DNA of 50,712 nucleotides from Octopus sinensis (GCF_006345805.1 NW_021834201.1:1-50712), one strand, 5' to 3'. Positions 17,801 through 36,060 are shown, numbered from the stretch's first letter. Numbers and translations: made by a program. Notes: generated by a model from the sequence alone, not told the origin.

Positions 17801-18485
17801 AGGTCTCACTGAGGAAATGACTAGAGACCGAGACCTCTGGAAGTGTGCTGTGCGCGAGAAGACCCGGCAGGACAAGTGAGTCCACAACCCGTGGCCTTCT
17901 ACATGGGATGGAGCCAGCCTACGTATGCATACCTTCCCTTCTTGGGACACAAAACTCTACTTGTGAAGACGTGTTGAGGCAAGTGAGGATCAGAATCGAA
18001 ATCGATCAATGGAAATTGCGGATGTGCTACCAGTGCCGGTGGCATGTCGAAACTCTGCTTGTGAAGACCCATTGAGGCAAGTGAGGATCAGAATCGAAAT
18101 CGATCAATGGAAATCGATCAATGGAAATTGCAGATGTGTTACCAGTGCCGGTGGCATGTAAGAGAACTTTCCGTTTCGCGACCGTTGCCAGCACCGCCCC
18201 GTTTCGTGTCCGTTGCCAGCCTCGCCTGGCCCTCGTGCCGGTGGCACATAAAAAGCACCATCCGTTCGTGGCCGTTTGCCAGCTCTGTCTGGCACCAGTG
18301 CGGGTGGCACGTAAAAAGCACCCACTACACTCACGGAGTGGTTGGCGTTAGGAAGGGCATCCAGCCGTAGAAACACTGCCAGATTTGACTGGGCCTGATG
18401 AAGCCTTCTGGCTTCACAGACCCCAGTAGAACCGTCCAACCCATGCTAGCATGGAAAACGGACGCTAAATGATGATGATGATGAT
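14830..18485 (+). mobile_element. RTE-clade LINE, nearly complete, 5'-truncated, one frameshift, (TGA)n tail; antisense within the exon 12-13 intron
   Basis: APE motifs (TLNVGTL, GDFNGHVG), RT motif LLYADDL, 3' region ending atgatgatgatgat at ~18485. Confidence 0.95.
15126..17879 (+). CDS. RTE polyprotein: APE C-terminal part, RT and PHD-like finger (917 aa; N-terminal ~85 aa lie in another frame at 14830-15085)
   Basis: Uninterrupted ORF; the upstream frame rejoins it if 1 nt is restored at ~15085. Confidence 0.93.
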   Translation: MLHHSLATIISAYAPQSGLPDGQKDRFYDTLLQTTSLTNDRDLIFVAGDFNGHVGRHAGGFHGVHGGYGYGSRNEEGTRLLEFCDANNLMICNTNFRKPTSHLVTYQSGQHTSQIDYILTRQRERWLLINAKTFPGEECTPQHRLVVSDFRIRTRRTTRRRQIWRRRIWKLKDPANGQRFRDILLEAADEVEGDRASQGVEDSWTFLRDNLLRATDQICGWCKVPSRPRITWWWNNIVDRAIREKRQAWKVWKNGGSRELYQTAKREARRQVYLARGEADKKKFANVLRREDQRLEVFRVARQCLRENRDVVGEKCVRMEDGSLALNEDAKREVWRCHYERLLNEENEWDKESLPNVDPTEGPAIRVDSSVVAKAIRSMKTGKAPGPSGITAEMLKMSGSVGYSLVTHIVNQVIHKGVIPNDWCSSIIVNCYKGKGDALDTNNYRGIKLLDQVMKVTERVIAQLIRERVSLDEMQFGFVPGKSTTDAIFLVRQLQEKYLAKDKPLYLAFVDMEKAFDRVPRSLIWWAMRKLGIDEWLVRAVRAMYRDAASRVRVGNEYSEEFRVEVGVHQGSVLSPLLFIIVLQAITEEFKTGCPWELLYADDLALIAESLSELEEKFQVWKQGLESKGLRVNLAKTKVVISRKVDKSQTPSGRWPCSICRKGVGRNSIRCTKCKLWTHKRCSNVKGRLTRKMVFVCGRCSGTINTENALRPTSVTFQGEKLEIVDSFRYLGDQVSSGGGCAESVTARVRIAWAKFRELLPLLVTKGLSHRVKGRLYDACVRTAMLHGSETWAVTAEDMRKLARNEASMLRWMCNAGTHTRQSVSTLREKLDLRSISCGVQERRLRWYGHVARMDEDSCVKKCHTLAVEGTCGRGRPRKTWDEVVKHDLRTLGLTEEMTRDRDLWKCAVREKTRQDK

Positions 18486-18838
18486 ATGTTAAACCTACTC
18501 TAGAGACCCAACAGAATATTAATAAGTAACAATGTGTTGCTAATTAATTTCAGAATGATTTCAGTATTTTTATAAAGGGTCCTCCTGGATTTACAAATTC
18601 TTAGCAAGCAATCTTATATATCAGGTAGATGTTACTTTGTATTTAATGAATAACTCATGCCAACACAGAAAGCAGATGTATGATGATGATGATTCAATTT
18701 AATAAATATTTAATGAATATTCAGTAAGCAGAATTGATAATAAATATATGATCCAAATATAATAAAACATATAACATAATAAAATTTAAATCTATACATG
18801 TAAATCATAAATTCACACTCGTATTAATATACAGATAC

Positions 18839-19071
18839 CTTTGCATAAATGCTGTGAAACAATCATAAAGAGACATTGGAGTATTTGGACGTAGGTTTTC
18901 CATAGATTCATGATCAATTACACTCTGCTCCAAGAGCTGACCCTGTTCAGCAGGAACAGTAACAAAAGTAATGGTAAGATGATCACCAGGTTGGAGAGTA
19001 ACTTGACCAGTGCGCTGGACAACACAACCAACACATTGGTTTACTGATGGACATCGAGAACACTGTAGACC
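18839..19071 (-). CDS. USP exon 12 (CxxCx5CxxC cluster)
   Basis: GLQCSRCPSVNQCVGC...MSLYDCFTAFMQ; 233 nt, phase 0-2. Confidence 0.93.
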
Positions 19072-20167
19072 CTTGAAGATAAAACAAGAGAAAGAGAAAA
19101 AAATATTAATGAATCTCTTATGATAAAAGGCAGATTTTCTCTGCCTCCCAAACCGTTCGTTTTTTATACAATTGTACAATATAGAATTTCTTCAATTGGA
19201 ATTTACCTATCATTTTTCCAAGTAGATTCCATTGGGTCATGGCATGTAAAGTTTTTTCAATTTCACCCCCAATTAAGCAAAAATTCGAGAGAACTCAATA
19301 TTTTATGATTTCCCTCTTTCATTTCAAGTGCTTCACTCCTACCATTACCACTACACTTTCTCCTCCTTTCTCTTTGCAAGTGTGCAGCAATTAAAGTGAA
19401 AGTATTTATATAAAAGGGATGAGCAATTAATACTGGTCATCCTTTTTGCTAGAGAAAGATCCGCTATGGTCTTATATGCTACACCACTGGTTTTCAATTC
19501 ATATTAATCAAATTAATATTCAATTTTTCAACCTTATTATGTGTGTGTGTATTAGCAATTCGTATAAAATTGCATCAATGACTTGAACTTGAATAAGTGG
19601 TTTCACATAAATGGGGATACATTAAAAAGGTTTGTTGTTATTATTATTACTGTTTGACTATTGTAATCACGTTTGTTGGTTCCTCGTCAGTGAAACGTTG
19701 TTGTGTTGCATTTGTTAAATAATTGTAAACCGTAACCCTCCCCCTTTCGGAGAAGGGGCTTTGGTTATTGTTTTAAAATTGAATTGTGTCCCTGTTTGGG
19801 GAAATTGACAATATTTTCACCGTCTTTACGGAAGCATTTTTGTTAAAATGCCTTCGATAGAAGAAAGTCCAAAAATGAATTTCGCTGCAGCCGTACACTT
19901 CTATACAAGAGGGAGGACAAGATCCAATTGATCGAAATTGCAAGAGACGGGCCTACAATTCCAGTCTGTTATATATTTTGAGTATTGTTATCACTAGCGA
20001 TATCAAGATATAACTTTCTATTTTGTATTTTATGTGTAGATGTATATATATATATAGATGTACATGTAATATGTACACACACATATATATATATATATAT
20101 ACACACACATATATACATGCATAATATATCTACCCATACACACACACACACATATACATAGGGGCAG

Positions 20168-21500
20168 GTGTGGCAACAAACTACGTTTGAAGATACTGTA
20201 CTTGATATGGGCGGTAGTGCCTTGCCGGTCTATGGCCTACCTTCAACAAACCGGGAAGGCACAAACACTCTGTCTTCACATTTGCTGCGTGAGACATGTT
20301 TTAATGTTGACGAGCTTGCCGAGTACATAGCCGACAATGAGCCAAAGCTCCTTCCAGAACAGAAGTTCGCTTACAACTCTGTTGTTAATTCAGACTGGGC
20401 CAAAGCTGTAGGGATATTTTTCCTGGACGCTCCTGGGGGCACTGGGAAAACTTTTCTCAACAAATTAATATTGGCTGAGATTAGGCGAACACAAGGCATT
20501 GCCCTAGCTGTGGCATCATCTGGAATTGCGGCTACTTTGTTGCCAGGTGGCAGGACAGCTCACTCCACTTTCAAGCTTCCGCTTGACTTAGCGAAGACTG
20601 AGACACCAACTTGCAACATCAGTAACAGCTCCGATCAGGCAGAAGTCTTCAGACAATGCAAGCTTATCGTTTGGGATGAATGCACGATGGCCCACAGAGG
20701 TGCTCTTGAGGCACTAGATAGATCTCTCAGAGACATCAAACACTCTTCAGCTCCCATGGGAGGCATAACACTTCTTCTTTCAGGGGACTTCCGACAAACA
20801 CTTCCCGTTATTCCCAAAGGGACTAGAGCTGATGCAGTAAGTGCGTGTCTTAAGTCATCCACATTGTGGCCACTGGTGAAGACTCTCAAACTTCACACCA
20901 ATATGCGTGCTCATATGCGACGTAATATCACATCAGCAGCATTTTCTCACACCCTCCTTGCACTTGGTGAAGGCAAAATACCAGGGGATGAAAATGGTAA
21001 TATTGCCATCGATTCCATTTGTACCATTGTTAAAACGCCTTCTGATCTCAGAGACGCAGTGTTCCCAGATCTACAAGCTAATTATCAGAATATGGATTGG
21101 ATTGGCCAAAGGGCTATTCTGGCCCCGAGGAATAAAACTGTTCACCATATTAATGATGAAATGCTAAAACTCATTCCTGGGGATGTCTATGTATATAAGT
21201 CTATAATTACAACTCCTGACCCAGAGGACGTCATCAACTATCCAATAGAGGTACTCAATTCCTTTGAGCCCCCCGGACTACCACCACACATTCTCAAACT
21301 TAAAGTTGGTGCCCCTATAATGCTCATTAGAAATTTGGTTCCCCCAAAACAATGCAATGGCACACGTTTTATTGTTAAGTCCTTATCTCCCACCATAAAC
21401 TTATATCAATATTTGCCTGAATAATCATCATAATTCAGTGCAATCATTAACAGTACTTTCAAGCAATTCAGCCCCGAGCATCGCCGAGCAATTCTGCTAG
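20168..21500 (+). mobile_element. Helitron fragment: partial PIF1 helicase plus 3' terminus
   Basis: DAPGGTGKT, IVWDEC, GDFRQTLPV and CNGTR motifs; 3' end cccgagcatcgccgagcaattctgCTAG|T at 21497-21501; Rep domain and last helicase motifs absent. Confidence 0.9.
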
Positions 21501-21557
21501 TGTTAAAATAAAATATAAGAATAAATGTAAGAATCTACAAACAGAAGTAGTACAAAC

Positions 21558-21741
21558 CTCTTCCATGGTAAAAGCGATTGTGTATTGCAGGGCTGTATGG
21601 ACTATTTGGTCAACACAATTATACAAAGTGCCACCACTAATGTTGTTAGGAAGGTATAAGATGTGGGGATGACCAATCAATTGCTGTTGTTCAGGATTTG
21701 ATTTACTTAGACATCGGAAAGTCAGTGGCACAGCTAAGATT
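21558..21741 (-). CDS. USP exon 11
   Basis: ILAVPLTFRC...LIGHPHILYLPNNISGGTLY...FTMEE; 184 nt, phase 2-0. Confidence 0.9.
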
Positions 21742-24229
21742 CTATGAGAAAAATATAGAAAAATATACAGATTATGCTTACACTACATATGGTCATGTAG
21801 TCTCTCATAATAGAACCTGTTCTAATGGTCATCATACAGTAACAAAGAATACGCTTTTATCATTTTAAAGTTCTAAATAATGTCATATGAATAATGAATT
21901 AGATAATAGAAAATTAAGGGCCATGAGTTGACTAAATATATTAACATTTACCTGGATGATGAAATTGATAGTCTAAAAGTGAGACTAACTTTTAGTATTT
22001 ATGTGAATAATTTATTGCAGAATAGTGCTCCTGACTTCACTCTAACAGCATTAATACCATCATTTTATGCCTGCTGTGTATGCAAACATAAGCCAGATGG
22101 TTTGACAGGATCTAATGAGTCAGAGGACCATGTTTTGCTCCAACAATTTATGGTGTTCACTCGGCATCCAGCCCTTCCTATCACCAACATGTTACTTTAC
22201 AGAGTGTACTGGGTGCTTTTTCATGGCACCAGCGTAAGTCACAATTAATGTGCAAAACTAAGAAACACCTCCATGACCTGAGAAAGAAAATTAAGAGAGA
22301 TAGGGTGGAGACTAGCAAGGTGTTAAGAAGTTAAAGTATGATGGAAGGAGCAGGTTTCTTGTGAAAGGATATTAGTGGGGAAGCTCAGAGAAAGAGCAGT
22401 GTCAGTGGTTTGTGAGTGCAACTCAGAGAATATTAACAAGGGCTGTGGGGTAGGCTGAATAGGAGATTTATAGCTACTCTGTGTTATATGTTGGTGTATT
22501 GATGCTAGAAAGAGAGACATAAAGATGGTGTTGAGGAACCAGAATATATCCTCAAGTCCAAGATAATGAATAGAAGAGAGCAAGGTGACAGAAGGGTCAG
22601 GTCAGGTGGGTAAAAATTACAAGAAAGTGTAGGAAGTGAAGGTAGTTTGGTGAATGAGAGTCAATAGTATGAATGAAGGATTGTTATCAATAGGAAGTGG
22701 CTCAAGGCAGAGGGAGTGATGATTGGTAGTACAGTATGGTAATATATAAGTCAATTTACATTTTCATTATTTAGTAGCTTGGTAGAATTATTAGAGTATC
22801 AAATAAAATGATATGTGGTGTTTAGTCATGACCCTTTATATTCACAGTTTAAGTTCTGCCAAAGTTAACTATCTTTCATCCTTCTGGTTTCAAATATAAT
22901 TAACTATACCCATCAACAATACACTTATAGTGAGTCAAGGAAGTTCTATTTGGTTGTCATGTATTAGCACTGTAGTACTACGGCAACTTCAGCCAATTAA
23001 AGCTGGTTGCGGATTAATACAAACAGCAACTTTCACACCTTTTTTCAATATTTAGCTAGCAGTTAGCAGGAAACTTTGACAAGTGCACAGCTATTTTCAG
23101 TAGGACTTTGGAAGGACACTACCCCTGATGGCATACTTCAACATGAACAGCTATGTTATTTCACCAACTTAACACAGTAAACTTCAGTATAACGTTAAGC
23201 TTGCTTGTCAAATCCCATTATTCTCTATTGATGGAACTTGCCTGTTTAACCTTTTTACTACATTTATCGTGGTATGCTTCTACCCATTTGTGTAAATATT
23301 AAGTCCATTGGCCTCTTTCCTTGACTCCAACATACAATTGCCTACTCTCATTGCAACCCAAATAAATTATGATGTTTATTCTGATTTATTTGTTGTATTT
23401 CCTCAATGCCTCACAGATGCAACTCTTTTCTTGACTTTCCATGTTGTGTATTTATTTAGTAACACACTAAAATTGGTAACACTTTAATCAAATTACATTC
23501 TAGCACCAAAACTACTCCATTACATTGGTGACTGATGTGATGTTGGAAGATTTCTTCGAGGAATGGGAAATATTCCCCCACTAAAAAAATATTAATATTA
23601 TTATGCACAGGAAATGAACACTTTAAAACTACATTTGCTGCATTCTGCTTCATTTGAACTCTGTGTGTACATTTAGCTGCACACACCCAGCATTCAATGT
23701 TCATGTTTTTCTATCATGCAATGTTGCACTTCAGCCTTTCTCTTAGGAAGAATATCTATTTGTTGCCGGAATAGGTAACAGCTTTCTGAACTTTTTTACC
23801 TATTCTTAATCTGGTTTCTATACTTTCTAAACATCCTCCTCCATTGATAATTAGGTCAGCTAAGGAGCAAATATTTCTAGGGAGCCTCTGAGAATTTGAA
23901 AGAATATATTTCATTAGTGCTCTTACTTATTATTCCTGTGCATTTGTTAAATATGAAGTTTGTCTCTGTCAGCTTGCCTGTAATTCCAATGTACCTTTTG
24001 TGTAACTATAGTGTATATCATGCAATTCTTACCTGTTCCTTTTCTTCATACTGCCCTTGGCTATTTCCAAGATGGCAGCAGAGTTCTATCTTCTTTCTTT
24101 TTAACTAAAAACTGTTTTTGTCAGTTTTACTTTTACAACTTGATTCTAGGCTTTGTTTCTATGTATGAAATTTTTTTTCTGTAATTCTGTGACAGACTCA
24201 ACCCCCTCTGTTAGAGAATAATAATAAAG

Positions 24230-24435
24230 ACGGGATTGAAACTGAATCTTGAACACCTATCTGCATGCTAAATTCTTCATGAAACTCATTGCCAACTCTC
24301 ACCTTGCTGACAACACCTTTATCTCTGTACTAGGCTTGTATGACTCTCGCAAACCATTCATCTACAGATTACAGAGGGTGGAATATTAAAAGCCTTCTTC
24401 AGGTCAATAAATACTAAGTACAGTGGCTTTGATTT
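24230..24435 (-). mobile_element. Degenerate RTE RT fragment
   Basis: Remnants like PLYLVFIDLKKAF, VDEW and KVRVGNEFHEEF match the 15126 ORF. Confidence 0.7.
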
Positions 24436-24554
24436 TTCTATTTGAAAGCCATCAAACTAACTTTGAAATTCATATTATTTTCTTATGCATCATTCTCCAT
24501 TTTGTAGTTAATATCTTCAACATTAAAGAAAAAGGATGAAATAAGCACAATTAC

Positions 24555-24631
24555 CTTGTTCTTAACCTTTTGCTGTCTGGATCAGCCAATGGGACAAATT
24601 CCACAGAAGGATTTACGAAAGCAAGACACAC
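24555..24631 (-). CDS. USP exon 10 (end of RING-like finger)
   Basis: VCLAFVNPSVEFVPLADPDSKRLRT; 77 nt, phase 0-2. Confidence 0.88.
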
Positions 24632-24733
24632 CTAGAATAGTACAAACAAAATACAGACAAAAGAAGTAATTTCTAGAGTGTTACTATCACAATAAATGTA
24701 AAAAAAGAAATTACATATAAAAAACCTACTTAC

Positions 24734-24775
24734 AGGGCAAGTATAAGAGAAAACACTATGGTGTTTCAGTGACAT
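24734..24775 (-). CDS. USP exon 9 (42-nt mini-exon inside the RING-like finger)
   Basis: ttattccag|ATG...TGCCCT|gtaagt; MSLKHHSVFSYTCP; phase 0-0; completes CP|VC with exon 10. Confidence 0.88.
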
Positions 24776-26829
24776 CTGGAATAATACAAAATATATATAT
24801 ATATAAATAAACTAAAATACATCAAAATTTATAAGCAAATCTGAAAGTTATGGAATAAAATGAGTAATCAAATACCTAAAGTATAAAGTTCAATCTTTGT
24901 TCAAAATATACATATTGTTATTCATAAAAGCATTGTGAACAGGTCATAACCTAAAAGGCCCCGATTACAACTATCAAAAAGTGTGCTGATGTAACCAAAA
25001 AAAACTTGAAACTGAAAATGGTTAGAAAATATACTTGCAACAGGCTGTCACATGCTTATATTTCTTAGCTTGGTGTTCTGACACTCTTTTCTCTCTCTCT
25101 CTCTTTATCTACATACATGCACCATTTTGTATAATATACTCCTGGCTTTTCAAATCACATCCATTTCTAAAACAGGTATTAACCCTTGATTTAAGTTTTA
25201 ATTCAATTTAAATCACCTGGATCAAAGGATGACTGAATTCATATTCTTGGAGAAAATGCTTTATACACATGTATACACACACACACACACAAACACACAC
25301 GTACACATATCATTTTATGCATTTTCCATGCTGGCATGTGATGGATGGTGTGACAGGATCTGACAGGTCAAAACCATGTTTCTGAGGCTGGTGGAAGCCC
25401 ATCCTAACAATAACCACTTCACAAGGTATTAGGTGCCTCTTTTCATGGTACCACCAATAGAGGTAGTCTTACCCTTAGCAAAATTAAAAAGCACCCTCAA
25501 AAGCCCTACATTGTCAATGATCAATTTGATTTATCAACCACTTACAGAGTGTACAAGGAGCTTTTTTTCTGTACACCAACACTAGGCATGCAAGGTGACA
25601 AAGAGACCCCATGACTGAAAGAGATGTTAAAATATGATGAGAAGCAGATATAGTGTGGTGAGAGGAATGGTAATGGAGAGAGCAACTGAGGATACTGTGT
25701 TGGTGAAGAAGACAAAGCAAAAGTAACACAAAGAGTAATGTCAGGAATTAGTGTAAAAGAGAGAGGGGAGATGTTATATACCCTCATTTTATGTCCACTT
25801 TCTCCATACTTGCACGATTTGGACAGCATCAAAATTTGTCAGTTATACAGGTTTAGTGTTGAGAGGGTTGGATAGAGGGAACTGATAGAAACAGCAAGTG
25901 TTATGAAAGAGGGTAATAGCAAAGAAAGGGAAAGCAGTGTTGGGAGGTGGGGGGTTGTGTGTGTATGTGTGTGTGTATATATATGAGAGAGAGAGAGAGA
26001 GAGAGTGTGTGTGTGTGTTAGAGTGATAAAGATGGTGAGATAGAGGTTTAACGAAGTAGTGATGTAGAGCCACTCTATGTTATATATGACTGGTGCATGA
26101 GAAGAGGCAAGTTAACATAACCAAGAGAACATAGTGAATCACGGAGGGTGAGTAGAGGTTGCCTCCCAACCCAAGCATCACAATTCAAGATAGAAGAATG
26201 AGTAGCAAGCTATAGGCGGTGGTGGGGGTAGAGGGTACTCAATAAGCACAACTTGAGTGCTTTCCTCTGAAGTACATATGGCATGGTATGGTGAGTAGAA
26301 GTCATGCTAAGGAGATGAGAGGGTATTGAATAGATAATGGTCAGAGAGGTGGTAGTGCACTACTCCACTATCTTAACCAATATTTTGCTATGGTTATGCA
26401 AGAAGCTGAGTCTTCTGCAGTACCAAGTGTTACCAGTTGATAATTGTTAATGGTTTTTTTCCTATTGTAGTTTTTATGGTGGAAGGAAGACTGGAAGCAA
26501 TGAGATGATGTCATGTAAGTGAGAAGGAAAGTTTTTCCCTGCATTTGGTTTTTCCTAGGGACATGAGCAGTGACAGACGCCAGTCATGAAAATACAGAGG
26601 TCGTGACAACATGAGTGAAGAGTTGATCAATCTGCCAGCAGTACCTGATTGCAAGTCAAAGCAAGAACAATTTTATTTATTTGCCTTCAAACCACAAGCT
26701 ATTTTGGCACATTGTTACTAGCTGTGAGGGTACGTCCGAGAAGTAGACATTTTATTTTTCTTTTTGTTCTTGTTCTTTGTTTGTAATTGATACAAAAATC
26801 AGAATTGGAAATGATATAGGGAAGGTGAT

Positions 26830-28780
26830 ATGATGGCCTGGATAAAGAAGGTAAGATTAGTGGCAGAGCTGCAGGGAATAAAAGATGTGGCAAGCCTTAT
26901 GCTGTTGTATTTAGAAGGCAATGCATTGAATCTCAACCTGGAGATGGATGAAGTGGACCAAGAGAAAGCAGAAAAAAATTGAACAGCAGCTGAAGGACAT
27001 GTACACGGAGGGGACTTTTAAAGCCTACAGCAAGCTGAGGAAGGTTAGATGGATTGGCAAGCAGATAGCAAGTTTTACTGGAGCAGCAATGGAGCGGATG
27101 GTGAAGCTGGCTTTTGTGACTGCTTCCCTGACCATATCTTTGTATGTCAGTAGCATCGAAATGATGTCGGTAGGAGAGATGATTGATAAATTGCGTGTGT
27201 TGATGCAAGGCGACATTCGAGACATAGTGATAACAGTGATGATGGTTACAAGTTGGACAAAGAGGCAGGTAGCAAACAACGAGAGCAAGAGTCTGGTGAG
27301 GTGAATGACCAAGGGACCATGTTTCAGATGTCAAGGTCTGCACATGATCAGGGAGTGCACAGAACCAAAGCCAATGGTTGTGTTTGCAATGCGGCCACCC
27401 TGGGCACATAGCAAAAAATTGCAAGCAGGGAAATGAAAGAAGGGGACTACTGCACTGCTAGTTCCCTCCACTATCAATTGAAGGTGCACAACCGAATGTT
27501 GCCAGTAGAGAGGCTTAAGGTGGTGGGGTGGGGAGAGAAGCACGAGCCCTCGATACAGGTTGCGCAACAACCCCGGTGACCGCAAGAATTGTTGAGAACT
27601 AAAGAAGAAACATCAGGCTCAGAAAGGTAGATGGTAGGGAGGTCAAATGTATAGGCATCAGCAACATGAAAATGGTAAGCAAGCATAATCTGGGAATCCT
27701 GAGGGAGTTAGCTGCCAAGTGCACCCTGGAACTGCATATGGTGTTTGTGCCCTCAGAAAAGAATAAAGTGAACGTCCTAACCAGAGTGAAAAAGAATTGG
27801 CTGGAAACAGTAGATGATGTTCTGGGTGAGGTGGCGGCAGTTTGTCAGTTGGAGGGCACAGAACTAAGGAGGCTGCACAATATGCATCATATGGGGGTCA
27901 ACAAGACAATGTCTTTGGCTAGGATGGAAACCCCGATGTCACTAGGGAGTGTGTTTGGAAGATAGTGAGGAAGTGTAACAGGTACCAATCGATTGATCCT
28001 GCCCTAGACACACACGAACTAGGAAAGATTCGGGTAGAGGAAGAATGGAAGAGGCTGGCCATTGATGTGACACACTATCGGGGAAAGGTGTACCTTTCAA
28101 TAGTCGACTGTGAACTGGGGCGAATGGCTATATGGAGAGGAATCAATGCAGAGACTGCTGCTGAGGGCACAGAGGTGCTGAATGCAGTGTTTTTAGAAAG
28201 GGGTCCTGTAGACGAACTATTGATGGATAACAGTGGAATCTTTCACTCAGAGCAGCTGAGAGAAATGCTTGAAAGACGGAGCACAAGATGCTTTTTCAGA
28301 GTTGCATATAGGACAGGTGGAAATGGGATTGTGGAACAGCACCACTGTATGATTAAAACCATGGCCAAGAGGGGACGAGTCTCCCTTATGGAGGCAGTCT
28401 TCTGGTATAACATGTTGCCCAAGGTAGGGCAAGCTGAACAGTCAGTCCTGCACAGGGCCATAATCTGATATTCTGAGACACCTCATGGTGGTGCCGCAGC
28501 AGCGAGAAGTGGAAGGGATTACATCCATGCAGGTTGGGGATGAGGTTGTGGGTGAAACACCCGAATGCTTGGTTCACAACACAATGTGAATAAGGAAAGG
28601 TGACCACAATCAGCACTTTCAATAATGTATCAGTGGATGGAATACCACATCATGTCCTTGATATTTGAAGGAAGATTAGCTCTTCCGATGACAAAGGGGA
28701 GGGGGAAGGGAGGCCCCGAGACCTTACGGAGATCTCTAAGGGAACATTGTCCCCCCAGGTCGATGGATGATTACGAGACA
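26830..28780 (+). mobile_element. Degenerate Gypsy-like LTR retrotransposon internal region (gag, protease site, RNase H end, integrase; RT missing)
   Basis: Zinc knuckles CFRCQGLHMIREC and CLQCGHPGHIAKNC; ALDTGC at ~27545; integrase WKRLAIDVTHY, ELLMDN, GNGIVE. Confidence 0.8.
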
Positions 28781-29339
28781 GAACAGGGGAGCAGTGATCT
28801 TTGACAGAAGCCATGAGAACCACTGCCTGGCACAGCATCAGGGAATACCAGCCATATACTTAGTATCTACAGAGCTGAATCTATGCTTTTAAATATGTTC
28901 ATCTTCAATATTTTGTTTTTTACTTCTCATAGTTATATCATTAATAATGTTAATACTAAGAAAAGTATATATATAATAATAGGAAGACTAAATCAAGGAA
29001 TATTATCTGGTATAACACATCATTCACATAATCTATAGCTACTAATATACCTTGGAAATTCTTTGTTGCACAAGATAATTATTTCTCACCTCCAAATAAA
29101 TATAGGGAATTATTTAATTGCTGTAGTATAAAATTTTCATGTTTCAACCACCAAAAATTTGGTTGAAATTATAGCAGCACATAATAAACAGAGAATTAGA
29201 GAGTATCTCAACTAAAAATCTTTAAACTAGAATAGAATTGAAAGCGTGAATTGTGAAATTTACTCTAATGCTAGTTTTCCCGAATTAGATTTCGATACTT
29301 TAAGTAAAAGTAATTCCAACTCTGATAATACAGTTAACA

Positions 29340-30410
29340 CTTAGTTTTAATATTAATTAAAATAATAATCCTGCCATAACAATTCTGAGTGGGGGGGACT
29401 AGTAATAATTCTTTTAAGCATCAGTACCAAATAGAAGTGTATAATTCTAAAAATAAAATTATCTGTCCTTTAGAAAATCAGTGTTTAAGGAAAAATATAG
29501 CGTATCAATGTAAGGTAATAACAGGGATTATTACATAGGTTTGCCTGCTACAATTTGGAAATCCAGATTTCATAATAATTCTCATTCATTTAAGTATGGA
29601 AGAAAAGGCAATTCTACAAATCTTAGTAAATGCATTTGGGATTTAAAAAGATAGGAACATTAAGTATGATTTAAAATGGTCCATTATTAATTACGCACCA
29701 TCATAAAATACTGTAATTTAAAATGTGATCTTTGCCTTGAGGAAATGTATTATACAATAACTTCTAAATTAATATTATTAAATTACGTTGGTAATTTTAC
29801 ATTGAAATGTTATCCCCAAATTTAGAAAAGCATTTAAATATTTCAATTCTTAATGTCATATAATAAGCATATATCATATAAACATAATTTTTCTAAAAAT
29901 GATTGGCATATTCAATAGAGAGAAAACTAATTGTTGTGTCATAGAATCTCTATATTTCTAATTGTTGTAACATAGAATTCATGTTTATTTTTTATTCTTT
30001 TGTTATTCACTTATGTCACCAAAAGTTGAATATCAAACTAGCTTCTCTTAAGATATATTTCTTCTTAATGTTCTTTTTGTATGTGTTTGTCTACTAGAGA
30101 TATTTTCTTAGTTCATTTTGAATTTAACCAATTTGGAATTGCCTTGATAACCTTGTGTTAACATATATTTTCGGATATATCACTGACTGATATTTTCTGT
30201 ATCTAAATATGTTGATACAATTGAAATGATCGTCAGTATTGTATAGTTGAATCACCAATTAAAGATGAGATTTTCTCCATTCTTATATTTTGAAATTCTT
30301 GTAAATGATATTTGGATCTACTTATACATGAAGATTTACCATGGATGTTTATTCAACTTGCATTTATTGGTGTTTGATTGTTTGACATAGTTAACCTAAT
30401 TTGTTTAACA
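29340..30410. mobile_element. Penelope-like element fragment (GIY-YIG region on plus strand, ~29400-29760)
   Basis: IICPLENQCLRKNIAYQC and KCDLCLEE; inverted homolog of 11300-11815. Confidence 0.6.
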
Positions 30411-30745
30411 CTGAGAGCTTTGATATTTGCCTGGAATTTTTAATCCCTTTCACTTCTTATATATATATACTCTTCATCCTCTGACACAAGTTCTCCTTAA
30501 ATGTCCTGCCTCTCTCATAATTCATCATCTTGTGAGTTACTTGGTTACCCTGCCAGTGCTAGTGCCACATAAAATGCACTGAGTCCACTCTGCGGAGTGG
30601 TTGGTGTTAGGAAGGGCATCCAGCCATAAAATCCCTGTCAAACAGATACAGTAGCCTAGGGTAGATTTTCTACTTGGCCTGCTCCTGTCAACCACCCTGC
30701 TCATGCATGGAAGATGGACGTTAAACAATGATGATGATAATATAT

Positions 30746-31093
30746 AATAATCAATTAGGAAACAGAAGATGGATTTAATATTAGTCTTTATTTTGTACAA
30801 CGATCGTTTTGAGCCATCCTGTGACTGTCTTTTATGGGTGGGATGATGTGCATCATATTGTGTTGCATCAGTTTTGCTGTCTGGGTCATGTCAAATATAA
30901 ACAAGCATGCCTGTACTTAATATTTTTAACAAGACACCACTTCATGTATGCATGTACCGGATGTGACCCAGACTGCAAAATTGATGCAACACAATATGAT
31001 GCATATCATCCACCTATAAAGGACACTTGCAGGATGGGTTGATAGAATAAAGACTAATACCAAATCTATCTTCAGTTTCCTTAATTGATTATT
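30746..31093. repeat. Long imperfect inverted repeat (arms 30746-30892 and 30959-31093, ~66-nt loop)
   Basis: Manual alignment of the left arm with the reverse complement of the right arm. Confidence 0.9.
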
Positions 31094-31869
31094 GTCTCAA
31101 CTAACACTGCGGAATTCCTGAAGTAGATCTAAGGGAAATATACCCTAACTGCAGATGACACCAGGTAGTCCAAACCGTGCTAGTGCTTTACTCAACACAT
31201 CAAAATATTAATTGACAAATACCCATTAATCCAAAAATTACACACACACATATTTGGACCACTGAAATCTACAAGTTTTTTTCATTCTCTCCTTTTATCT
31301 TCTCTTAATCCTTTCTGTTGAGAAGCATAGGAAGCATAGGCTCAAAACGTAAAAGACCTTTTCATTTTCCTGAGCATCAAACTAATACACTTGTTTGTTG
31401 ATCATACACTTGTGTGTGTGTATATATATATATATTTATATATATACATACACACACACACACACACACAAGCATAAATATACATGTGTAAAATATGTCA
31501 GAATTTGAAGAACAAGTTTGGTGACACTGCTTGTTTTCGTAGGTAAATGTTTTTCATCATCATCATATTTAAATTTTTTTTAGGTGTGTATGTTGTCATT
31601 GGTAAGACATCATGTGGTGTTGGTGTGTATAATACATATGTTGTTTTAGTTTGCTGAGTTACTACTGCTCTTTCTGAACAATACATTCATTCACAATGTT
31701 TTTTCTCACAAAATCTCATGCTGCTGTCAGCCAAGTTGAGGTATGGATGCATACATAATTGAAGATTAGAAGAAAAAGATGTTATGACATGCTCCAGCAA
31801 ATGATAAAATAAAAATTTGTGAAGAACATATCTATTCTATGTAATAGCTGTATGAGAACATTTACTTAC

Positions 31870-32562
31870 TTCAAGACAACTATGACAAAAAGTGCCACTG
31901 CAAGATGTGTGCACCATTAAACTTGTATCAAGTAATTCCTCCAAACAGATGGCACAAGATCGCCAGTGTTCAGCAATGGATGATAAATTCGCAGAGGGTG
32001 CAGACTCCCAACTCATTGGAATGGCTGGCCTTTTGGAATTATCTGTTGTCAAAGACCAATCCCATATTTGGTCAGTTTGCATAGAGTCTGGATCAGGATC
32101 ATTAGTTTTGGACTGAGTTGTAACTGATGAAGAATCACAAACATGAGCATCATCTGTCACAATTGAATCAGGGAATGCAGAGGTAGACATGCTTGTTGTT
32201 AATGTAGACTGGCTCAGAGGAGTTAATACAGGATCCAAAGATGGCTGTGATAATAGTGGAAGGTTACTATCATTTGACTGTGGAGTTACATCAGATACTG
32301 TTGTGCTCATTGATGTTGTCTTCTGTGGTGAACAGTTACTGGGGCAGAAAGTATCCATATTTGAAAAAATGTCAGGAGATTTTGAAGAACTAGTTTGTTT
32401 GGTGGCAATGCTTTCTTTAGTAGCTAAACTGGAGTTAACTGTTGGCAGCTTTCCTAAATTGTCTGATGGGGAACTGTCCAGTGAATTAGGAGGAACAGCC
32501 ATTTGAAAGGCATAAATTTTTCGAGCAGAATCATTGACAAACCGGAGCAATATATTGTCATC
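31870..32562 (-). CDS. USP exon 8 (UBL-like end, Ser/Thr-rich linker, start of RING-like finger)
   Basis: DDNILLRFVNDSARKIYAFQ...CAICLEELLDTSLMVHTSCSGTFCHSCLE; 693 nt, phase 0-0. Confidence 0.93.
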
Positions 32563-32629
32563 CTAAAAAGAAAATGATCAAAAGAGAACTATTAGAAATG
32601 ATGATGGAGCAGTAGTAGTATCAGTAATC

Positions 32630-33030
32630 CTTTCTGCTATAGACACAAAGCCTGGAATCCTGGGGAGGGGCTAGTCAATTACATCAACTCCAGTGTGCAA
32701 CGGGTACTTATTTTATCAACCCTGAAAGAAAGGCAAAGCTGATCTCAGTGGAATTTGAATGCAGAACTTAAAGACAGATGAAATGCTGCTAAGCATTTTG
32801 TCCAGTGTGCTAATGATTCTGCTAGCCTGCCATCATAATAGTAGTAGTAATCTTTTCTACTATAGGCACAAGACCTGAAATTTTAAGGGAGAGAGCTAGC
32901 TGATTATACTGATCCCAATGCTTATCAACCCTGAAAGGATGAGAGGCAAAATTGACCTCAGCAGAATTTGAATGCAGAACGTAAAGACAGACGAAATGCT
33001 GCTAAACATTTTGTCTGGCATGCTAATGAG
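32630..33030 (-). mobile_element. Two tandem copies of a second SINE-like family
   Basis: Repeated tatcaaccctgaaag...gcaaa...ctcag...gaatttgaatgcagaac...cattttgtc block; partial plus-strand copy at ~44205-44345. Confidence 0.7.
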
Positions 33031-34656
33031 TAGTAGTAATAATAACAATAATAGTTTCTTATATTGTTAGAAAACAAACTATATTCTGATACATATTTTA
33101 TAGACCCTGCAGAAATAACAAGTGAACCATAGCATAAACTGTAAAAGGAAAAGAAAACAAACTGACTCCACATAGCAATAATGATGCCAAGAATGATATT
33201 AACAGATTTGAGGTCAAGACATGTAACCTTGGATCATATAGACAGTTTACTAAAGTCAAAGCACTGGTTTCCACAAGTTACCTGACTGATAACATATATG
33301 GTATGGAAAATAAACAACAGTGAAACAAATTGGTCAAATGTCATACAACAGGTCAAATTTGCAAAAGCCATCTCATCAATGCTAGGGTGATTGAATGGAT
33401 ACAAAAATATTAAAGGTCTAATATTGTGAACTGGAACATTCAGATTCAACTGTAAGGAATGGAGTGCTATTCAAATGATAAAGCATGAAGCATAAACTCT
33501 TTGGTTGATAGTCTGGCACCCAATCAATGTATTAAGCTGTGATTCTCATAAAAGATTATATATGAAAAATGTAAATTGTGGTGGTTTAAAGTGCCATAAA
33601 TTCATAATTAGTGTTAGTCAAGGAAGACAGTAAAGATGATAAAAATATTATTGTTACAATGGGAAAGGCTTGACCTTTCAACTTTTGGCTATCCTAAATG
33701 TAATAAAATTCTCCAAATGATTAAGCAGCGTAAAACAGATGGAGAGCTATATAGGATCATTCAAGTGAAATTCAACAAGGGTCCATCGTGAAGTTTCTTA
33801 GATTTTCTTCAAATTTACACTATTAGTTAATATCCATGGGATGAGTAATTCCTGAAAATTTCAGCTCCATAATAAGATTTTATGGCCATTTAAAGTTTTA
33901 GGCAATTTTCAAAATAATGAATTTCTTTTATTTTTAGGGGCCCATCATTCTAAATAGGTTTGATATCATAAGCAAGCAAATAACTTTTGATTCATTTTAT
34001 TTTTTACTGTTTCATGTTATTTCTGATATTTTTTACTAGTTTTCTTAATTTTTTTTCAATTTTGGAAGGAAAATACAGTCTTTTGTAATCGAAAACTTTT
34101 ATAATTGTCTTAACTATCAATATGAAACTAGTAGAATTTTTGACCCCATGAATCTATTATGAAGGTATTATAAAAGGATGAGGATCTATTTTCTGATCAC
34201 ATTTTTGTTATTGTATAGTCAAGAGGTCAATGTCCAAGGATTTTTAGGTTTGAAAGTTTTCCTAATTGTTGCATATTTATTTCTGGGGCTCTGAACTACC
34301 CATAAAAATGGAAATTTCTATTTTCAGAGGATGAAAATTGATATTTAGAGTAGTTTTAAATGCTGTATTCTTACATTTCTATACTCACCATTAGGTGTAT
34401 TTTCTGAGTATATATAGTTTTATATAGTTTTCACTTTAGTGATAAGAAGTTAGTCTGGTTAAAAAATAAAAAAAAAACACCCCTCAATTTTCAAACTTTC
34501 TCACAGAACTTTGTTGAATTTCACTGGAATGACCCAAATGTTTCCATTAGATTGGCTGGGAAAATACACAAAAATAACGAATGACAATATCAAGGATAAA
34601 AACAATAATATTGTACATGATCAATTAAAAAGCATTATGAAAGTTCTTTGACTTAC

Positions 34657-34829
34657 AAGGACTCGTGAAATGTAATTGTTAACTACTTCAACCATGATGA
34701 TATCACAGTTTTGCTGGCCTGCCGTCTTTCGCAGTTCAGTTTTGGCTTTATAAATGTTGTCATTTTTGTGCAGTTTTAAGAGATACCGTATGGGCGGAAT
34801 AGTACGGGTTTGTGTGATAAATATAACAC
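34657..34829 (-). CDS. USP exon 7 (UBL-like insert; not in the ORF track)
   Basis: VIFITQTRTIPPIRYLLKLHKNDNIYKAKTEL...IIMVEVVNNYISRVL; 173 nt, phase 1-0. Confidence 0.92.
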
Positions 34830-35377
34830 CTGAAAAACAATTTCAGCCAAGTCTTAGACAAATTTCTGAACATGAACATGGATAATAGAGAATAAAGAGC
34901 ACTGATTCAAGACAAACAGAATCTAAAAAGACTAGAGTGAGTTATGAGAAATAATATCCTAGTTTCTTGCTGTTATCTTGATTTTATAGTATGGTATGAA
35001 CTCAATGACATAAATTAAGAAAACACTAAGGCACTTCACTCAACTGTTTGTCCTCCATATACATCTCATATTTGTACTAGTTCAATCTACAACTCAAGTA
35101 TACTACAAGATTCTTCTTACACCTAGTTTTCCACAGTTTATTTGTGCATTAACAATATACATCCAATGGGTACACCTAATTTCTTTTCAGCTGTCACGCA
35201 TCCCCTGCCCCTGGCTTTTAATGTTTGTTTTGTTATGCAGCATTGCACTTCATAGGCATGTGTCATACAATCTATCCTTCACATGGAGTAATAATTCCTT
35301 TATTTCTATGAGAGTTAAGAGTTTCCTGAACTTTTTCAGGCTTATGCTTTTTAACACACACCTCCATTGCTACTTAA

Positions 35378-35597
35378 CCCTTTCATTACCAAGCTGGCTG
35401 AAGCCAGCTCTGGCTCTGAGTACAAATGTCTTGTTTTCATAAGTTTTGAATTAAAATCTTCCACCAAACCTTAGTCACAATTTATGTTCCTAATACTAGC
35501 TGAATGGTAACTAAGTTACTTTACTAAATTCTTTGTTATATTTAAAGTAATTGAAAGAAACACAGAGCATCTCAAAATAAATACAGTAACGAAAGAG
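35378..35597. mobile_element. piggyBac-type MITE
   Basis: TTAA|CCCTTTCATTAC...GTAACGAAAGAG|TTAA. Confidence 0.75.
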
Positions 35598-35607
35598 TTA
35601 AGTCACC

Positions 35608-36060
35608 TCAGTAAAAGAAACTATCAACTACTTCTAGGGAGCCTTCCAGGCATTTCAAACAATTTATTAGATGGATACTCTTATAGCTAACCACTCCTGC
35701 ACCCCATAGTTTACATAGAGTAAACCATATATAATTCCTACAGACTACTTTCCTGTATACTGATAATGGCTGTTTTCCAGATGGCAGTTGAGTCCTGTTT
35801 TCTTTTCTATTCCTTAAAAGTTCCATCTTTATGAGGTTTACTTGTAGACATTTTGGTTCTAATTTTACTTCCATGTTTCGAATTAAAAAAAAAAAAGTTT
35901 TGACAGAGAACTAAGTCAACAACATACAGAAGCTCTGACAGACAGCTGGTTTCAAACTCATTTATTATTGCCTGGAGGATGCTGAGATTTGAGTTCTGAT
36001 AGACACCTACCTGCACACTAAATTCCTTGCTGAATTTGTTGCTAACTCTTACCATGCTAT
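35608..36060 (-). mobile_element. Degenerate RTE RT fragment
   Basis: VRVSNKFSKEFSVQVGVYQ, ELLYVVDLVL and LEVVDSF match the 15126 ORF. Confidence 0.75.

What the first reader, a model, noticed from the sequence alone, without database searches (positions are those of the whole stretch)
18839..34829. Deubiquitinase with a RING-like finger inside its catalytic domain (candidate DUB/E3 hybrid)
Seen: between the two finger CxxC pairs (CSEC, CPNC) the spliced protein has a UBL-like segment, a Ser/Thr-rich linker, then C1004-x2-C-x11-H-x2-C-x4-C-x2-C-x14-C-x2-C1048 (CAICLEE...CPVC), then C-x2-C-x5-C-x2-C (C1137-C1149). Catalytic C98, H1304 and N1321/D1322 are intact. Known: USP4/11/15/19/32-type enzymes carry inserts here (UBL; MYND in USP19; a similar four-Cys cluster in USP32/USP6). 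Ile before ligand 2 and Pro after ligand 7 are RING E2-contact features. I know of no characterised USP with a RING at this site. Inference: a ubiquitin-editing enzyme or E2/substrate adaptor. Caveats: ligands 3 and 4 are H then C (reverse of RING-HC), and there is no linchpin Arg after the last Cys.
Basis: partly seen in the sequence, partly recalled or inferred. Interest (0 to 1): 0.8.

Follow-up and report, generated by a model that had tools for sequence, protein, structure and literature searches.

The report
Deubiquitinase with a built-in RING finger
A cephalopod gene encodes an intact ubiquitin-removing enzyme with a genuine RING finger (the hallmark of ubiquitin-adding enzymes) nested inside its catalytic domain; the same layout is conserved from a unicellular relative of animals to sea squirts, was not found in vertebrates, and I found no study of it.

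Summary

The finger is a real RING.
- Pfam zf-RING_2 scores 33.5 bits on the isolated segment.
- A family profile hits solved RINGs: RNF4 (2e-13) and TRIM32 (5e-9).
- An AlphaFold model of the bivalve ortholog's segment has a core pLDDT above 90, and its best PDB matches are all RING E3 domains.

All eight ligands, the Ile before ligand 2 and the Pro after ligand 7 are invariant or nearly so in 46 full-length orthologs. In cephalopods the RING is as conserved as the catalytic core. The orthogroup runs from an ichthyosporean and sponges to Ciona. Every source calls it "uncharacterized" or misnames it USP4/11/15/32-like. No vertebrate member appeared, and six literature searches found no description.

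The insert occupies the USP4/11/15 UBL2 site and reads UBL, linker, RING, then a beta-grasp domain with a Zn knuckle. Ligase activity is inferred, not shown: the linchpin position is Leu here and Ser or Asn in most orthologs. I read it as a new variant of a known kind, a likely cis-coupled DUB/RING enzyme. A non-catalytic docking RING is almost as likely.

The parts
9920..46788 (-). Whole coding region of the USP-RING gene: 16 exons, 1444 aa, with the stop codon included at 9920-9922
   Evidence: Spliced model with GT-AG at every junction. It aligns end to end, 73% identical, with Argonauta hians P0153. Pfam UCH matches at E 3.5e-60.
43728..43999 (-). Cys-box exon holding the catalytic Cys98 (codon 43949-43947) in NLGNTCFMN
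   Evidence: tblastn with orthologs. Cys invariant in 46/46. Closest solved cores are USP15, USP4 and USP11.
39751..41373 (-). Large exon: QHDCQEF motif, a roughly 500-aa mostly low-complexity insert 1 with short conserved motifs, then FHGQFKNT
36892..36985 (-). First finger pair CSEC (C715, C718) of the canonical USP zinc site
   Evidence: Invariant in 46/46.
34657..34829 (-). First exon of the UBL-like domain (aa 744-801). Its first base is the finding's 'end' coordinate. The domain continues to about aa 825 in the next exon.
   Evidence: Junctions. Pfam USP7_C2 matches the equivalent segment of orthologs: P0054 scores 34.0 bits against a cut-off of 29.4, and P0015, P0069 and P0178 score more weakly.
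31870..32562 (-). Exon holding the end of the UBL-like domain, the Ser/Thr-rich linker (aa ~826-995) and RING ligands 1-6 (C1004, C1007, H1019, C1022, C1027, C1030)
   Evidence: The linker is only 38-41% identical among cephalopods, against 91-94% for the RING.
24734..24775 (-). Mini-exon MSLKHHSVFSYTCP carrying RING ligand 7 (C1045) and Pro1046
   Evidence: The same sequence is present in Argonauta.
24555..24631 (-). Exon VCLAFVNPSVEFVPLADPDSKRLRT carrying RING ligand 8 (C1048), the linchpin position Leu1049 and the conserved EF[VI]PL tail
21558..21741 (-). First part of the post-RING beta-grasp domain (RILAVPLTF...YTIAFTMEE)
   Evidence: tblastn. AlphaFold model of the amphioxus ortholog's segment has mean pLDDT 89.7. 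Foldseek matches are beta-grasp and UBL folds, including the USP7 C-terminal UBLs, with weak TM-scores of 0.3-0.4.
18839..19071 (-). Exon with the four-Cys knuckle C1137-x2-C-x5-C-x2-C1149, the end of the beta-grasp domain, and the return to the USP core (SLYDCFTAFMQ). Its last base is the finding's 'start' coordinate.
   Evidence: The knuckle Cys are at least 90% conserved and are absent in the sponge ortholog P0070.
14428..14544 (-). Second finger pair CPNC (C1222, C1225) in WYCPNC
   Evidence: Invariant in 46/46.
13199..13342 (-). His-box exon with catalytic His1304 (13328-13326) and Asn1321/Asp1322

Best explanation
**Shown.** The locus encodes an intact USP-family deubiquitinase. Its catalytic core is closest to USP4/11/15. 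The insertion site that holds UBL2 in those enzymes here holds four modules in order:
- a UBL-like domain;
- a disordered Ser/Thr-rich linker;
- a genuine cross-brace RING finger;
- a second beta-grasp domain carrying a four-Cys zinc knuckle.

The protein belongs to an ancient single orthogroup of holozoans, from an ichthyosporean, sponges and cnidarians to amphioxus and Ciona. I found no functional study of any member, and no vertebrate member appeared.

**Inferred.** The RING docks an E2~ubiquitin through the conserved Ile1006 and Pro1046 surface. One polypeptide would then both add ubiquitin (RING) and remove it (USP). That would make it a cis-coupled editing enzyme that could trim or reshape the chains it helps to build, or keep itself free of auto-ubiquitin. 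Its weak, non-basic linchpin (Leu here; Ser or Asn in most orthologs) suggests it pairs with an E2 that needs little allosteric activation. The second zinc site would be formed by His1019, Cys1022, Cys1045 and Cys1048, with His1019 replacing the canonical fourth ligand.
For: **Gene model and catalytic residues**
- The gene model matches a cephalopod database protein (Argonauta hians, NCBI) end to end.
- Pfam UCH scores 3.5e-60, and the triad and finger Cys are invariant in 46 orthologs.

**RING identity**
- Pfam zf-RING_2 scores 33.5 bits (cut-off 27.3) over model positions 2-43 of 44 on the isolated segment. Five RING families match at E <= 1.5e-4.
- 19 of 34 ortholog segments hit zf-RING_2 at E <= 1e-3.
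- The family profile finds 220 solved chains at E <= 1. The 60 best that were listed include RNF4 (2.3e-13), TRIM32 (4.7e-9), TRIM5, RING1B and BRCA1.
- The AlphaFold model of the Tegillarca segment has mean pLDDT 83.8 and a core above 90.
- The Foldseek top 50 are RING-type zinc-finger E3 domains (including RBR RING1 and the SP-RING of Smc5/6), many solved with an E2. Probability is about 1.0, with rmsd 2.4-3 A over about 60 columns.

**E2-contact positions**
- Ile is conserved in 45/46 and Pro in 44/46.

**Selection**
- The RING is 94% and 91% identical to Argonauta and Sepia, like the catalytic core (95% and 87%). The adjacent linker is 38-41% identical.

**Breadth**
- An exhaustive HMM search gave 193 cluster representatives at E <= 1e-10.
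- Named members include Chromosphaera, Sycon, Hydra, Lingula, Patiria, Glandiceps, Branchiostoma and Ciona.

**Non-basic linchpins in RINGs**
- RBX1 has Asn, which stimulates Cdc34 and Ubc12 better than Arg. Rad18 has Leu, but that paper says how such RINGs stimulate their E2 is largely unknown (PMC7667886).
- TRIM32 has Ser (PMC11992055), and TRIM32 is the best single-domain PDB hit of the family profile.
Against: - There is no biochemical evidence of E2 binding or ubiquitin transfer for any member.
- The linchpin is not Arg, Lys or His. RINGs lacking it can be pseudoligases, as in TRIM6 and TRIM22 (PMC11992055).
- The position four residues after ligand 6, where c-Cbl has Trp408 (recalled from memory, not checked), is Ser, Thr or Tyr in this family.
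- In the full-length protein the Pfam score is 26.5 bits, just under the 27.3 cut-off.
- The choice of His1019 as a ligand rests on conservation only.
- No flanking helices of the kind that dimerise TRIM or RNF4 RINGs are predicted.
Confidence: 0.45

Rival explanations
1. The RING is real but non-catalytic. It would be a 'pseudoligase' docking or regulatory module that does one of three things:
- binds a partner RING E3 or a substrate, aiming the deubiquitinase like a natural 'anti-ligase';
- regulates the USP in cis, as the UBL2 insert at the same site does in USP4/11/15;
- tunes chain-type preference.
For: - The linchpin position is non-basic: Leu here, Ser in 16 and Asn in 15 of 46 orthologs.
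- TRIM pseudoligases lack just this kind of feature (PMC11992055).
- The insert lies exactly where USP4/11/15 carry UBL2. In USP11 that insert steers linkage preference (PMC12718135, title and abstract).
- Engineered E3-DUB fusions act as dominant-negative anti-ligases (PMC7047443).
- Inactive RINGs commonly pair with active ones, as BARD1 does with BRCA1 (mentioned).
Against: - The two best-known E2-contact residues (Ile before ligand 2, Pro after ligand 7) are kept in 45/46 and 44/46 orthologs from an ichthyosporean and sponges to tunicates. A pure docking module would have less reason to keep them.
- At least some RINGs with Ser or Asn at the linchpin are active.
Confidence: 0.4
2. The RING works with the E2 of another ubiquitin-like modifier (SUMO, NEDD8 or similar) rather than a ubiquitin E2. 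The enzyme would then cross-wire two modification systems.
For: - A USP with ligase-type activity toward SUMO already exists: USP36 (PMC10164564, listed).
- The Asn linchpin of RBX1 is optimal for the NEDD8 E2 (PMC7667886). Asn is the second commonest residue at that position in this family.
Against: - The profile and fold matches are to ubiquitin RING E3s, not to SP-RING or MIZ fingers. Two Smc5/6 entries do appear low in the fold list.
- There is no direct evidence of any kind.
Confidence: 0.08
3. The finger is an artefact: a mis-spliced gene model, or a chance run of Cys and His residues in a low-complexity insert.
For: - The RING is split over three exons separated by a 7.1-kb intron that contains a retroelement remnant.
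- No RNA-seq was available.
- The Pfam score in the full-length context is marginal (26.5 against 27.3 bits).
Against: - The same contiguous sequence is found in independent predicted proteins of Argonauta and Sepia, and in more than 60 orthologs from more than ten phyla, with all eight ligands invariant.
- All junctions are GT-AG and in frame.
- The profile and fold searches recover only RINGs.
Confidence: 0.02

Closest known systems
USP4 / USP11 / USP15 (DUSP-UBL deubiquitinases)
   Same: - They are the closest solved catalytic cores, at E about 1e-77.
- Their catalytic domain is split at the same place, between the fingers strand ending in 'LPLP' and the 'L.DC..F...E.L...WYCP.C' segment.
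- A UBL-type domain sits at the start of the insert.
- Automatic annotation often names members of this family 'USP4/11/15-like'.
   Different: - No N-terminal DUSP or UBL1 domain: no DUSP hit even at E <= 10.
- The insert additionally carries a RING and a beta-grasp domain with a Zn knuckle.
- There is a second large insert between the Cys box and the fingers.
- The orthogroup is distinct and coexists with true USP15-like genes in the same phylum. For example, the scallop protein P0074 has DUSP and no RING, while another scallop has the fragment P0058 of the RING family.
USP19 (MYND zinc finger nested in the USP domain)
   Same: A zinc-finger domain is nested within a USP catalytic domain.
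   Different: MYND is a protein-interaction finger that is neither homologous to RING nor linked to E2 binding. Here all the profile hits are RING families.
TRIM32 and RNF4 RING domains
   Same: - They are the best matches of the family profile among solved structures: RNF4 at 2.3e-13 (tandem construct) and TRIM32 at 4.7e-9.
- They share the CxIC...CPxC signature.
- TRIM32 is an active E3 with Ser at the linchpin, the commonest residue in this family.
   Different: - Those are canonical C3HC4 RINGs that act as dimers through flanking helices or tails.
- Here the canonical fourth ligand is variable, an upstream invariant His is the likely ligand, and no flanking helices are predicted.
A20/TNFAIP3 and engineered E3-DUB 'anti-ligases'
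   Same: - One polypeptide combines a deubiquitinase with a ligase-type module.
- A20 is the textbook 'ubiquitin-editing' enzyme (from my own knowledge).
- Engineered E3-DUB fusions reverse the fused E3's ubiquitination (PMC7047443).
   Different: - A20 is an OTU enzyme with a ZnF4 ligase element, not a USP with a RING.
- The anti-ligases are artificial end-to-end fusions.
- Here the RING is a natural, ancient, nested domain.

Membership tests
USP / peptidase C19 deubiquitinases | Cys box with the catalytic Cys (G-x-x-N-x-G-N-T-C-[FY]-x-N) | tested here: met
   GFYNLGNTCFMN with C98. Invariant in 46/46 orthologs.
USP / peptidase C19 deubiquitinases | His box with the catalytic His and the downstream Asn/Asp | tested here: met
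   SGHY (H1304) and YNDEN (N1321/D1322). Conserved in 45/46.
USP / peptidase C19 deubiquitinases | Significant match to the family profile over both halves | tested here: met
   Pfam UCH PF00443 at E 3.5e-60 and 204 bits, in two stretches. phmmer to the USP15 and USP4 cores at about 1e-77, in three stretches.
USP / peptidase C19 deubiquitinases | Isopeptidase activity on ubiquitin | not testable with these tools
   Needs a Ub-AMC or di-ubiquitin assay.
RING finger (cross-brace zinc domain) | Eight Cys/His ligands with RING spacing | tested here: met
   C-x2-C-x11-H-x2-C-x4-C-x2-C-x14-C-x2-C. All eight are invariant in 34 segments and in 46 full-length orthologs. The spacing from C1022 to C1027 equals the canonical ligand 3 to ligand 5 spacing.
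RING finger (cross-brace zinc domain) | Score above the curated threshold of a RING profile | tested here: inconclusive
   zf-RING_2 scores 33.5 bits on the isolated segment (above the 27.3 cut-off) but 26.5 bits within the whole protein (below it). 19 of 34 ortholog segments match at E <= 1e-3. One metagenomic member, P0135, carries PF13639 in the precomputed table.
RING finger (cross-brace zinc domain) | Homology to solved RING domains and a predicted RING fold | tested here: met
   Profile against PDB: RNF4 2.3e-13, TRIM32 4.7e-9 and many more. AlphaFold core pLDDT above 90. Foldseek top 50 are RING-type zinc-finger E3 domains. Both structure tests used the bivalve ortholog P0060, whose RING region (aa 996-1062 of the window protein) is 54% identical to the window's.
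RING finger (cross-brace zinc domain) | Binds two zinc ions | not testable with these tools
   Needs metal analysis. For the whole protein the expected total is four Zn: one in the USP finger, two in the RING and one in the knuckle.
RING-HC (C3HC4) subtype | His at the fourth ligand position (C-x-H after ligand 3) | tested here: not met
   Gly1024 occupies that position in the window. Across orthologs it is C in 21, F in 16, G in 4 and L in 2. An invariant His lies three residues upstream of ligand 3 instead.
Catalytically competent RING E3 ligases | Hydrophobic E2-contact residues (Ile/Val before ligand 2; Pro after ligand 7) | tested here: met
   Ile1006 is conserved in 45/46 (Val in one). 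Pro1046 is conserved in 44/46.
Catalytically competent RING E3 ligases | Basic 'linchpin' (Arg, Lys or His) after the last ligand | tested here: not met
   Leu1049 in the window. In the family Ser occurs in 16, Asn in 15, and Gly, Thr and others in the rest, with Arg in only a few. Non-basic linchpins do occur in RING E3s: RBX1 (Asn, active), TRIM32 (Ser, active) and Rad18 (Leu, mechanism unknown).
Catalytically competent RING E3 ligases | E2 binding and stimulation of ubiquitin discharge | not testable with these tools
   Needs an E2 panel or discharge assays.
DUSP-UBL USP subfamily (USP4/11/15) | N-terminal DUSP domain | tested here: not met
   No DUSP (PF06337) match in the 1444-aa protein's near-identical 1425-aa model, even at E <= 10. 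None is in the precomputed domains of the RING-bearing orthologs either.
DUSP-UBL USP subfamily (USP4/11/15) | UBL domain inserted in the catalytic domain after the first finger pair | tested here: inconclusive
   Pfam USP7_C2 matches that segment in orthologs (P0054 at 34 bits, above the cut-off; others weaker). The window's own segment gave no hit and no match to a solved chain.

The most novel reading that the evidence does not exclude
This would be a natural, ancient enzyme that unites a working RING ubiquitin ligase and a working USP deubiquitinase in one catalytic domain. It predates animals, since it is present in the ichthyosporean Chromosphaera. It would be a self-contained ubiquitin-editing machine whose RING uses an unusual zinc-ligand arrangement, with His placed upstream of ligand 3. 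It would have escaped study because no member was seen in vertebrates, and I noticed none from flies or nematodes among the named members I sampled.
Probability: 0.4. Interest if true: 0.8.

Novelty: new variant of a known kind. Interest (0 to 1): 0.66.

Why it matters
Deubiquitinases and RING ligases are normally separate proteins that find each other. Much of ubiquitin biology concerns such DUB-E3 pairs, in which the DUB protects the E3 from self-destruction or edits its chains.

Here the two modules are welded together inside one catalytic domain. They have been kept that way, with every zinc ligand and every catalytic residue intact, from an ichthyosporean and sponges to sea squirts.

If the RING is active, the family is a minimal natural model of coupled ubiquitin writing and erasing, and the first USP-class counterpart of A20. 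If the RING is inactive, it is a natural 'anti-ligase' or a new way of aiming or regulating a USP.

Either way, the result does three things:
- It defines an unnamed, widely conserved metazoan USP orthogroup that automatic annotation currently mislabels as USP4/11/15/32-like.
- It offers compact members for biochemistry, such as Hydra (714 aa) and Rhopilema (838 aa).
- It documents a RING variant in which an upstream His appears to replace the canonical fourth ligand.

Tried and rejected
- **Plain ORF and regex scans for 'CPVC'.** These failed because an intron splits CP|VC. I resolved it by looking for 'CPV' next to a GTAAGT donor.
- **First gene model.** It lacked a 57-nt exon and gave C79.
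- **Second and third word-indexed homolog searches.** They returned only 12 and 7 hits, so breadth came from the exhaustive HMM search plus cluster look-ups.
- **Other zinc-finger identities.** No hit to zf-C2HC5 or to IBR. PHD scored E 0.33. FYVE matched only 3 of 34 segments, at best E 2.5e-4. RING families dominate.
- **Sequence search of the UBL-like segment against solved structures.** Nothing was found.
- **Post-RING domain.** No Pfam family matched. The fold search gave only weak beta-grasp matches.
- **Literature.** Six searches and three papers that survey deubiquitinase and ubiquitin-system repertoires or their evolution gave no description of a RING inside a USP. One survey has only an unspecified 'mixed-family' class, 0.4% of its entries.

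Full report
**1. What is in the sequence**

The finding lies in an intron-rich gene on the minus strand. The window has about 35% G+C and contains many microsatellites and transposon remnants. Stop-to-stop scans showed USP motifs scattered from about 44 kb down to about 10 kb.

A search with the N-terminal exons retrieved a family of 800-1150-aa invertebrate proteins. tblastn of four of these against the window placed the exons. Junctions were then fixed by eye to GT-AG sites in the right phase.

One 57-nt exon (45735-45679) was added after aligning the model with the Argonauta hians protein P0153. That protein matches the model end to end at 73% identity. The final model has 16 exons, spans 46788..9920 and encodes 1444 aa.

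- catalytic residues C98, H1304 and N1321/D1322;
- USP finger pairs CSEC 715-718 and CPNC 1222-1225;
- RING C1004 to C1048;
- knuckle C1137 to C1149.

The finding's coordinates 34829 and 18839 are true exon ends.

The RING is encoded by three exons. Its last ligand pair is split 'CP|VC' by a 102-nt intron, which is why simple pattern scans miss it. The nearest relatives are Argonauta (octopod) and Sepia proteins, so the window comes from a cephalopod, most likely an octopod.

**2. Is the finger a RING?**

Four independent lines say yes.

(a) Pfam. The isolated segment scores 33.5 bits on zf-RING_2 (cut-off 27.3) over positions 2-43 of the 44-position model. It also matches zf-C3HC4, zf-C3HC4_2, zf-RING_5 and zf-RING_UBOX. 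Inside the whole protein the score is 26.5 bits, just under the cut-off. That explains why the precomputed annotations of the orthologs list only the UCH domain. Nineteen of 34 ortholog segments match zf-RING_2 at E <= 1e-3.

(b) Solved structures by sequence. A profile of 34 ortholog segments finds 220 solved chains at E <= 1. The 60 best that were listed are led by RNF4 (2.3e-13 for the tandem construct), TRIM32 (4.7e-9), TRIM5, TRIM2, RCHY1, RNF125, RING1B and BRCA1.

(c) Predicted structure. An AlphaFold model of the bivalve (Tegillarca, P0060) segment with this alignment has mean pLDDT 83.8, and its core blocks score 91-95.

(d) Fold search. The 50 best Foldseek matches of that model in the PDB are RING-type zinc-finger E3 domains. 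They include RING1B, TRAF5/6, TRIM21, TRIM2, TRIM25, TRIM32, RAD18 and RNF20, along with the RBR RING1 of HOIL-1 and the SP-RING subunit of Smc5/6, and many were solved with an E2. Probability is about 1.0 and rmsd is 2.4-3 A over about 60 columns. E-values of about 1e-2 are what one expects for so small a domain.

No hit supported the alternatives I considered: C2HC5, IBR, PHD and FYVE.

**3. Conservation**

Sixty-six of the first 120 hits carry the same motif between the Cys box and the WYCxxC finger.

Ile before ligand 2 and the following Leu-Glu are at least 90% conserved.

In 46 full-length orthologs the following are all invariant or nearly so:
- the catalytic Cys, His and Asn-Asp;
- both finger pairs;
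- the eight RING ligands;
- Ile (45/46) and Pro (44/46);
- the four knuckle Cys.

The sponge Corticium lacks the knuckle.

Among cephalopods the RING is 94% and 91% identical (to Argonauta and Sepia). That equals the catalytic core (95-96% and 83-87%). The adjacent Ser/Thr linker is only 38-41% identical. The RING is therefore under the same constraint as the active site.

**4. The ligand oddity**

Aligned to canonical RINGs, C1022 sits at the normal third-ligand position and C1027 and C1030 at the fifth and sixth. The canonical fourth position (C-x-H) is Gly1024 in the window. Across orthologs it is Cys in 21, Phe in 16, Gly in 4 and Leu in 2 of 46. It therefore cannot be the conserved ligand.

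His1019, three residues (two to four in the family) upstream of C1022, is invariant. One fig-wasp protein has a CxxC at that place instead. By inference, zinc site 2 is H1019/C1022/C1045/C1048. It rests on conservation only, because coordinates of the model could not be inspected.

**5. The rest of the insert**

The closest solved USP cores are USP15, USP4 and USP11 (E about 1e-77), followed by USP8, USP2 and USP21. The match breaks at residues 718 and 1180. That is exactly where the crystallised USP4/15 cores had their UBL2 insert removed.

The segment just after the first finger pair matches Pfam USP7_C2, a UBL-type domain, in orthologs. P0054 scores 34 bits, above the cut-off, and three others score more weakly. 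The window's own segment gave no hit.

The linker between the UBL and the RING is about 35 aa in compact orthologs and about 170 aa, rich in Ser and Thr, here.

The domain after the RING models confidently (mean pLDDT 89.7, pTM 0.76). It matches beta-grasp folds, including the C-terminal UBLs of USP7, TBCE-UBL, ubiquitin variants, UBX and FERM-F1. TM-scores are low at 0.3-0.4. The four-Cys knuckle lies between its strands.

The architecture is therefore USP-N, then [UBL, linker, RING, beta-grasp with knuckle], then USP-C. There is also a second, roughly 500-aa, mostly disordered insert between the Cys box and the fingers, which holds a few motifs conserved across phyla. No DUSP domain is present.

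**6. Distribution and naming**

An exhaustive profile search of 1.84 billion cluster representatives, using the RING-to-knuckle profile, gave 193 proteins at E <= 1e-10 and 62 at E <= 1e-30. All 42 representatives of at least 600 aa except one old Nematostella model show the RING motif.

Named members cover many groups:
- sponges (Corticium, Sycon);
- cnidarians (Rhopilema, Hydra, Porites);
- insects (Hymenoptera, Hemiptera, Orthoptera, Blattodea, Odonata, thrips and lice);
- chelicerates, sea spiders and horseshoe crabs;
- crustaceans;
- molluscs, a brachiopod and annelids;
- echinoderms (Patiria, Diadema, Antedon, Apostichopus);
- hemichordates, amphioxus and the tunicate Ciona;
- the unicellular ichthyosporean Chromosphaera perkinsii, whose RING scores 24.4 bits on zf-RING_2.

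No vertebrate appeared. In the first search the vertebrate hits were USP20 at about 1e-10. Among the members I could name I noticed no dipteran or nematode. This is absence from what I could name, not proof.

Every source name is 'uncharacterized protein' or a borrowed label such as USP4, 5, 11, 15, 19 or 32-like. One is even called 'serine-rich adhesin for platelets-like'.

**7. Literature**

Six full-text searches, and reading of three papers that survey deubiquitinase and ubiquitin-system repertoires or their evolution, found no description of a RING inside a USP domain. The nearest items were:
- an unspecified 'mixed-family' class in one census, 0.4% of entries;
- engineered E3-DUB 'anti-ligases';
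- USP36 acting as a SUMO ligase;
- the role of the USP11 UBL2 insert in linkage choice.

**8. How it probably works**

Shown: an intact USP active site, a real and strongly constrained RING, and conserved Ile and Pro at the positions that contact E2s in characterised RING E3s.

Inferred: the RING recruits an E2~ubiquitin, so that ligation and deubiquitination are coupled in cis.

The missing basic linchpin is a real caveat, because TRIM6 and TRIM22 are inactive partly for this reason. It is not disqualifying, for three reasons:
- RBX1 uses Asn, which even outperforms Arg for Cdc34 and the NEDD8 E2.
- Rad18 has Leu, although how such RINGs stimulate their E2 is described as largely unknown.
- TRIM32, the family's best single-domain PDB match, is active with Ser.

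I give the coupled DUB/E3 reading 0.45. I give a non-catalytic docking or regulatory RING 0.40, use of another ubiquitin-like E2 0.08, and artefact 0.02. The remainder is left unassigned.

**9. Verdict**

The object is a member of the USP family and of the RING fold family. It is not a C3HC4 RING, and it fails the basic-linchpin criterion of typical active E3s.

As far as I could find, the nested USP-RING architecture has not been described in the literature, although the sequences sit unnamed in public databases. I rate it a new variant of a known kind, with an interest of about 0.66.

Noticed in passing
window 20168-21424 (+ strand), inside the intron between exons 21741-21558 and 19071-18839: An intact 418-aa ORF encodes a PIF1-like helicase (Pfam PIF1 3.8e-66, plus the Pif1 2B domain). 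This is typical of a Helitron-type transposon and lies antisense to the USP gene.
   Followed up: partly
window 26948-28468 (+ strand), inside the 7.1-kb intron that separates RING ligands 1-6 from ligand 7: ORFs here look like a retroelement remnant. The 167-aa ORF weakly matches the integrase core (rve, E 5.8e-4). The upstream 118-aa ORF has no Pfam hit.
   Followed up: partly
window 4416-5174 and 6201-6566 (- strand), downstream of the gene: Tc1/mariner-type transposase remnants: DDE_3 at 2.5e-12, and HTH_Tnp_Tc3_2 at 2.2e-14 and 3.5e-4.
   Followed up: partly
window 39751-41373 (- strand), protein aa ~460-585: Insert 1 is otherwise poorly conserved and low in complexity, but it holds short motifs kept across phyla: K-x2-K-T-[SL]-N-x-N-x-L-V-x-E, D-S-x-K-F-P-K and K-R-x-[RK]-[LI]. 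It also holds a long acidic run. The function of these motifs is unknown; they could be docking motifs or a nuclear localisation signal.
   Followed up: partly
window 24632-24733 (- strand): A 102-nt phase-0 intron splits the last zinc-ligand pair of the RING between Pro1046 and Val1047 (CP|VC). The preceding exon is only 42 nt.
   Followed up: yes
orthologs P0070 (sponge Corticium), P0047 (fig wasp Ceratosolen), P0213 (Nematostella): Lineage variants exist.
- The sponge protein lacks the four-Cys knuckle.
- The fig-wasp protein has a CxxC where all the others have the invariant His.
- The old Nematostella model shows the knuckle but no RING, which is probably a gene-model gap.
   Followed up: partly
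window 18203-18322, and 17900-18450 generally: There is a 63-nt tandem repeat of 1.9 copies. It sits in a G+C-richer stretch whose ORFs repeat on both strands. It lies in the intron downstream of the knuckle exon and is probably part of a repeat element.
   Followed up: no
window 1-3400 and 47000-50712: I did not annotate the flanks. Open frames with no Pfam match occur at 1722-2420 (-), 49850-50251 (-) and 50266-50640 (-). The last two look like remnants of a retroelement, judging by eye only.
   Followed up: no
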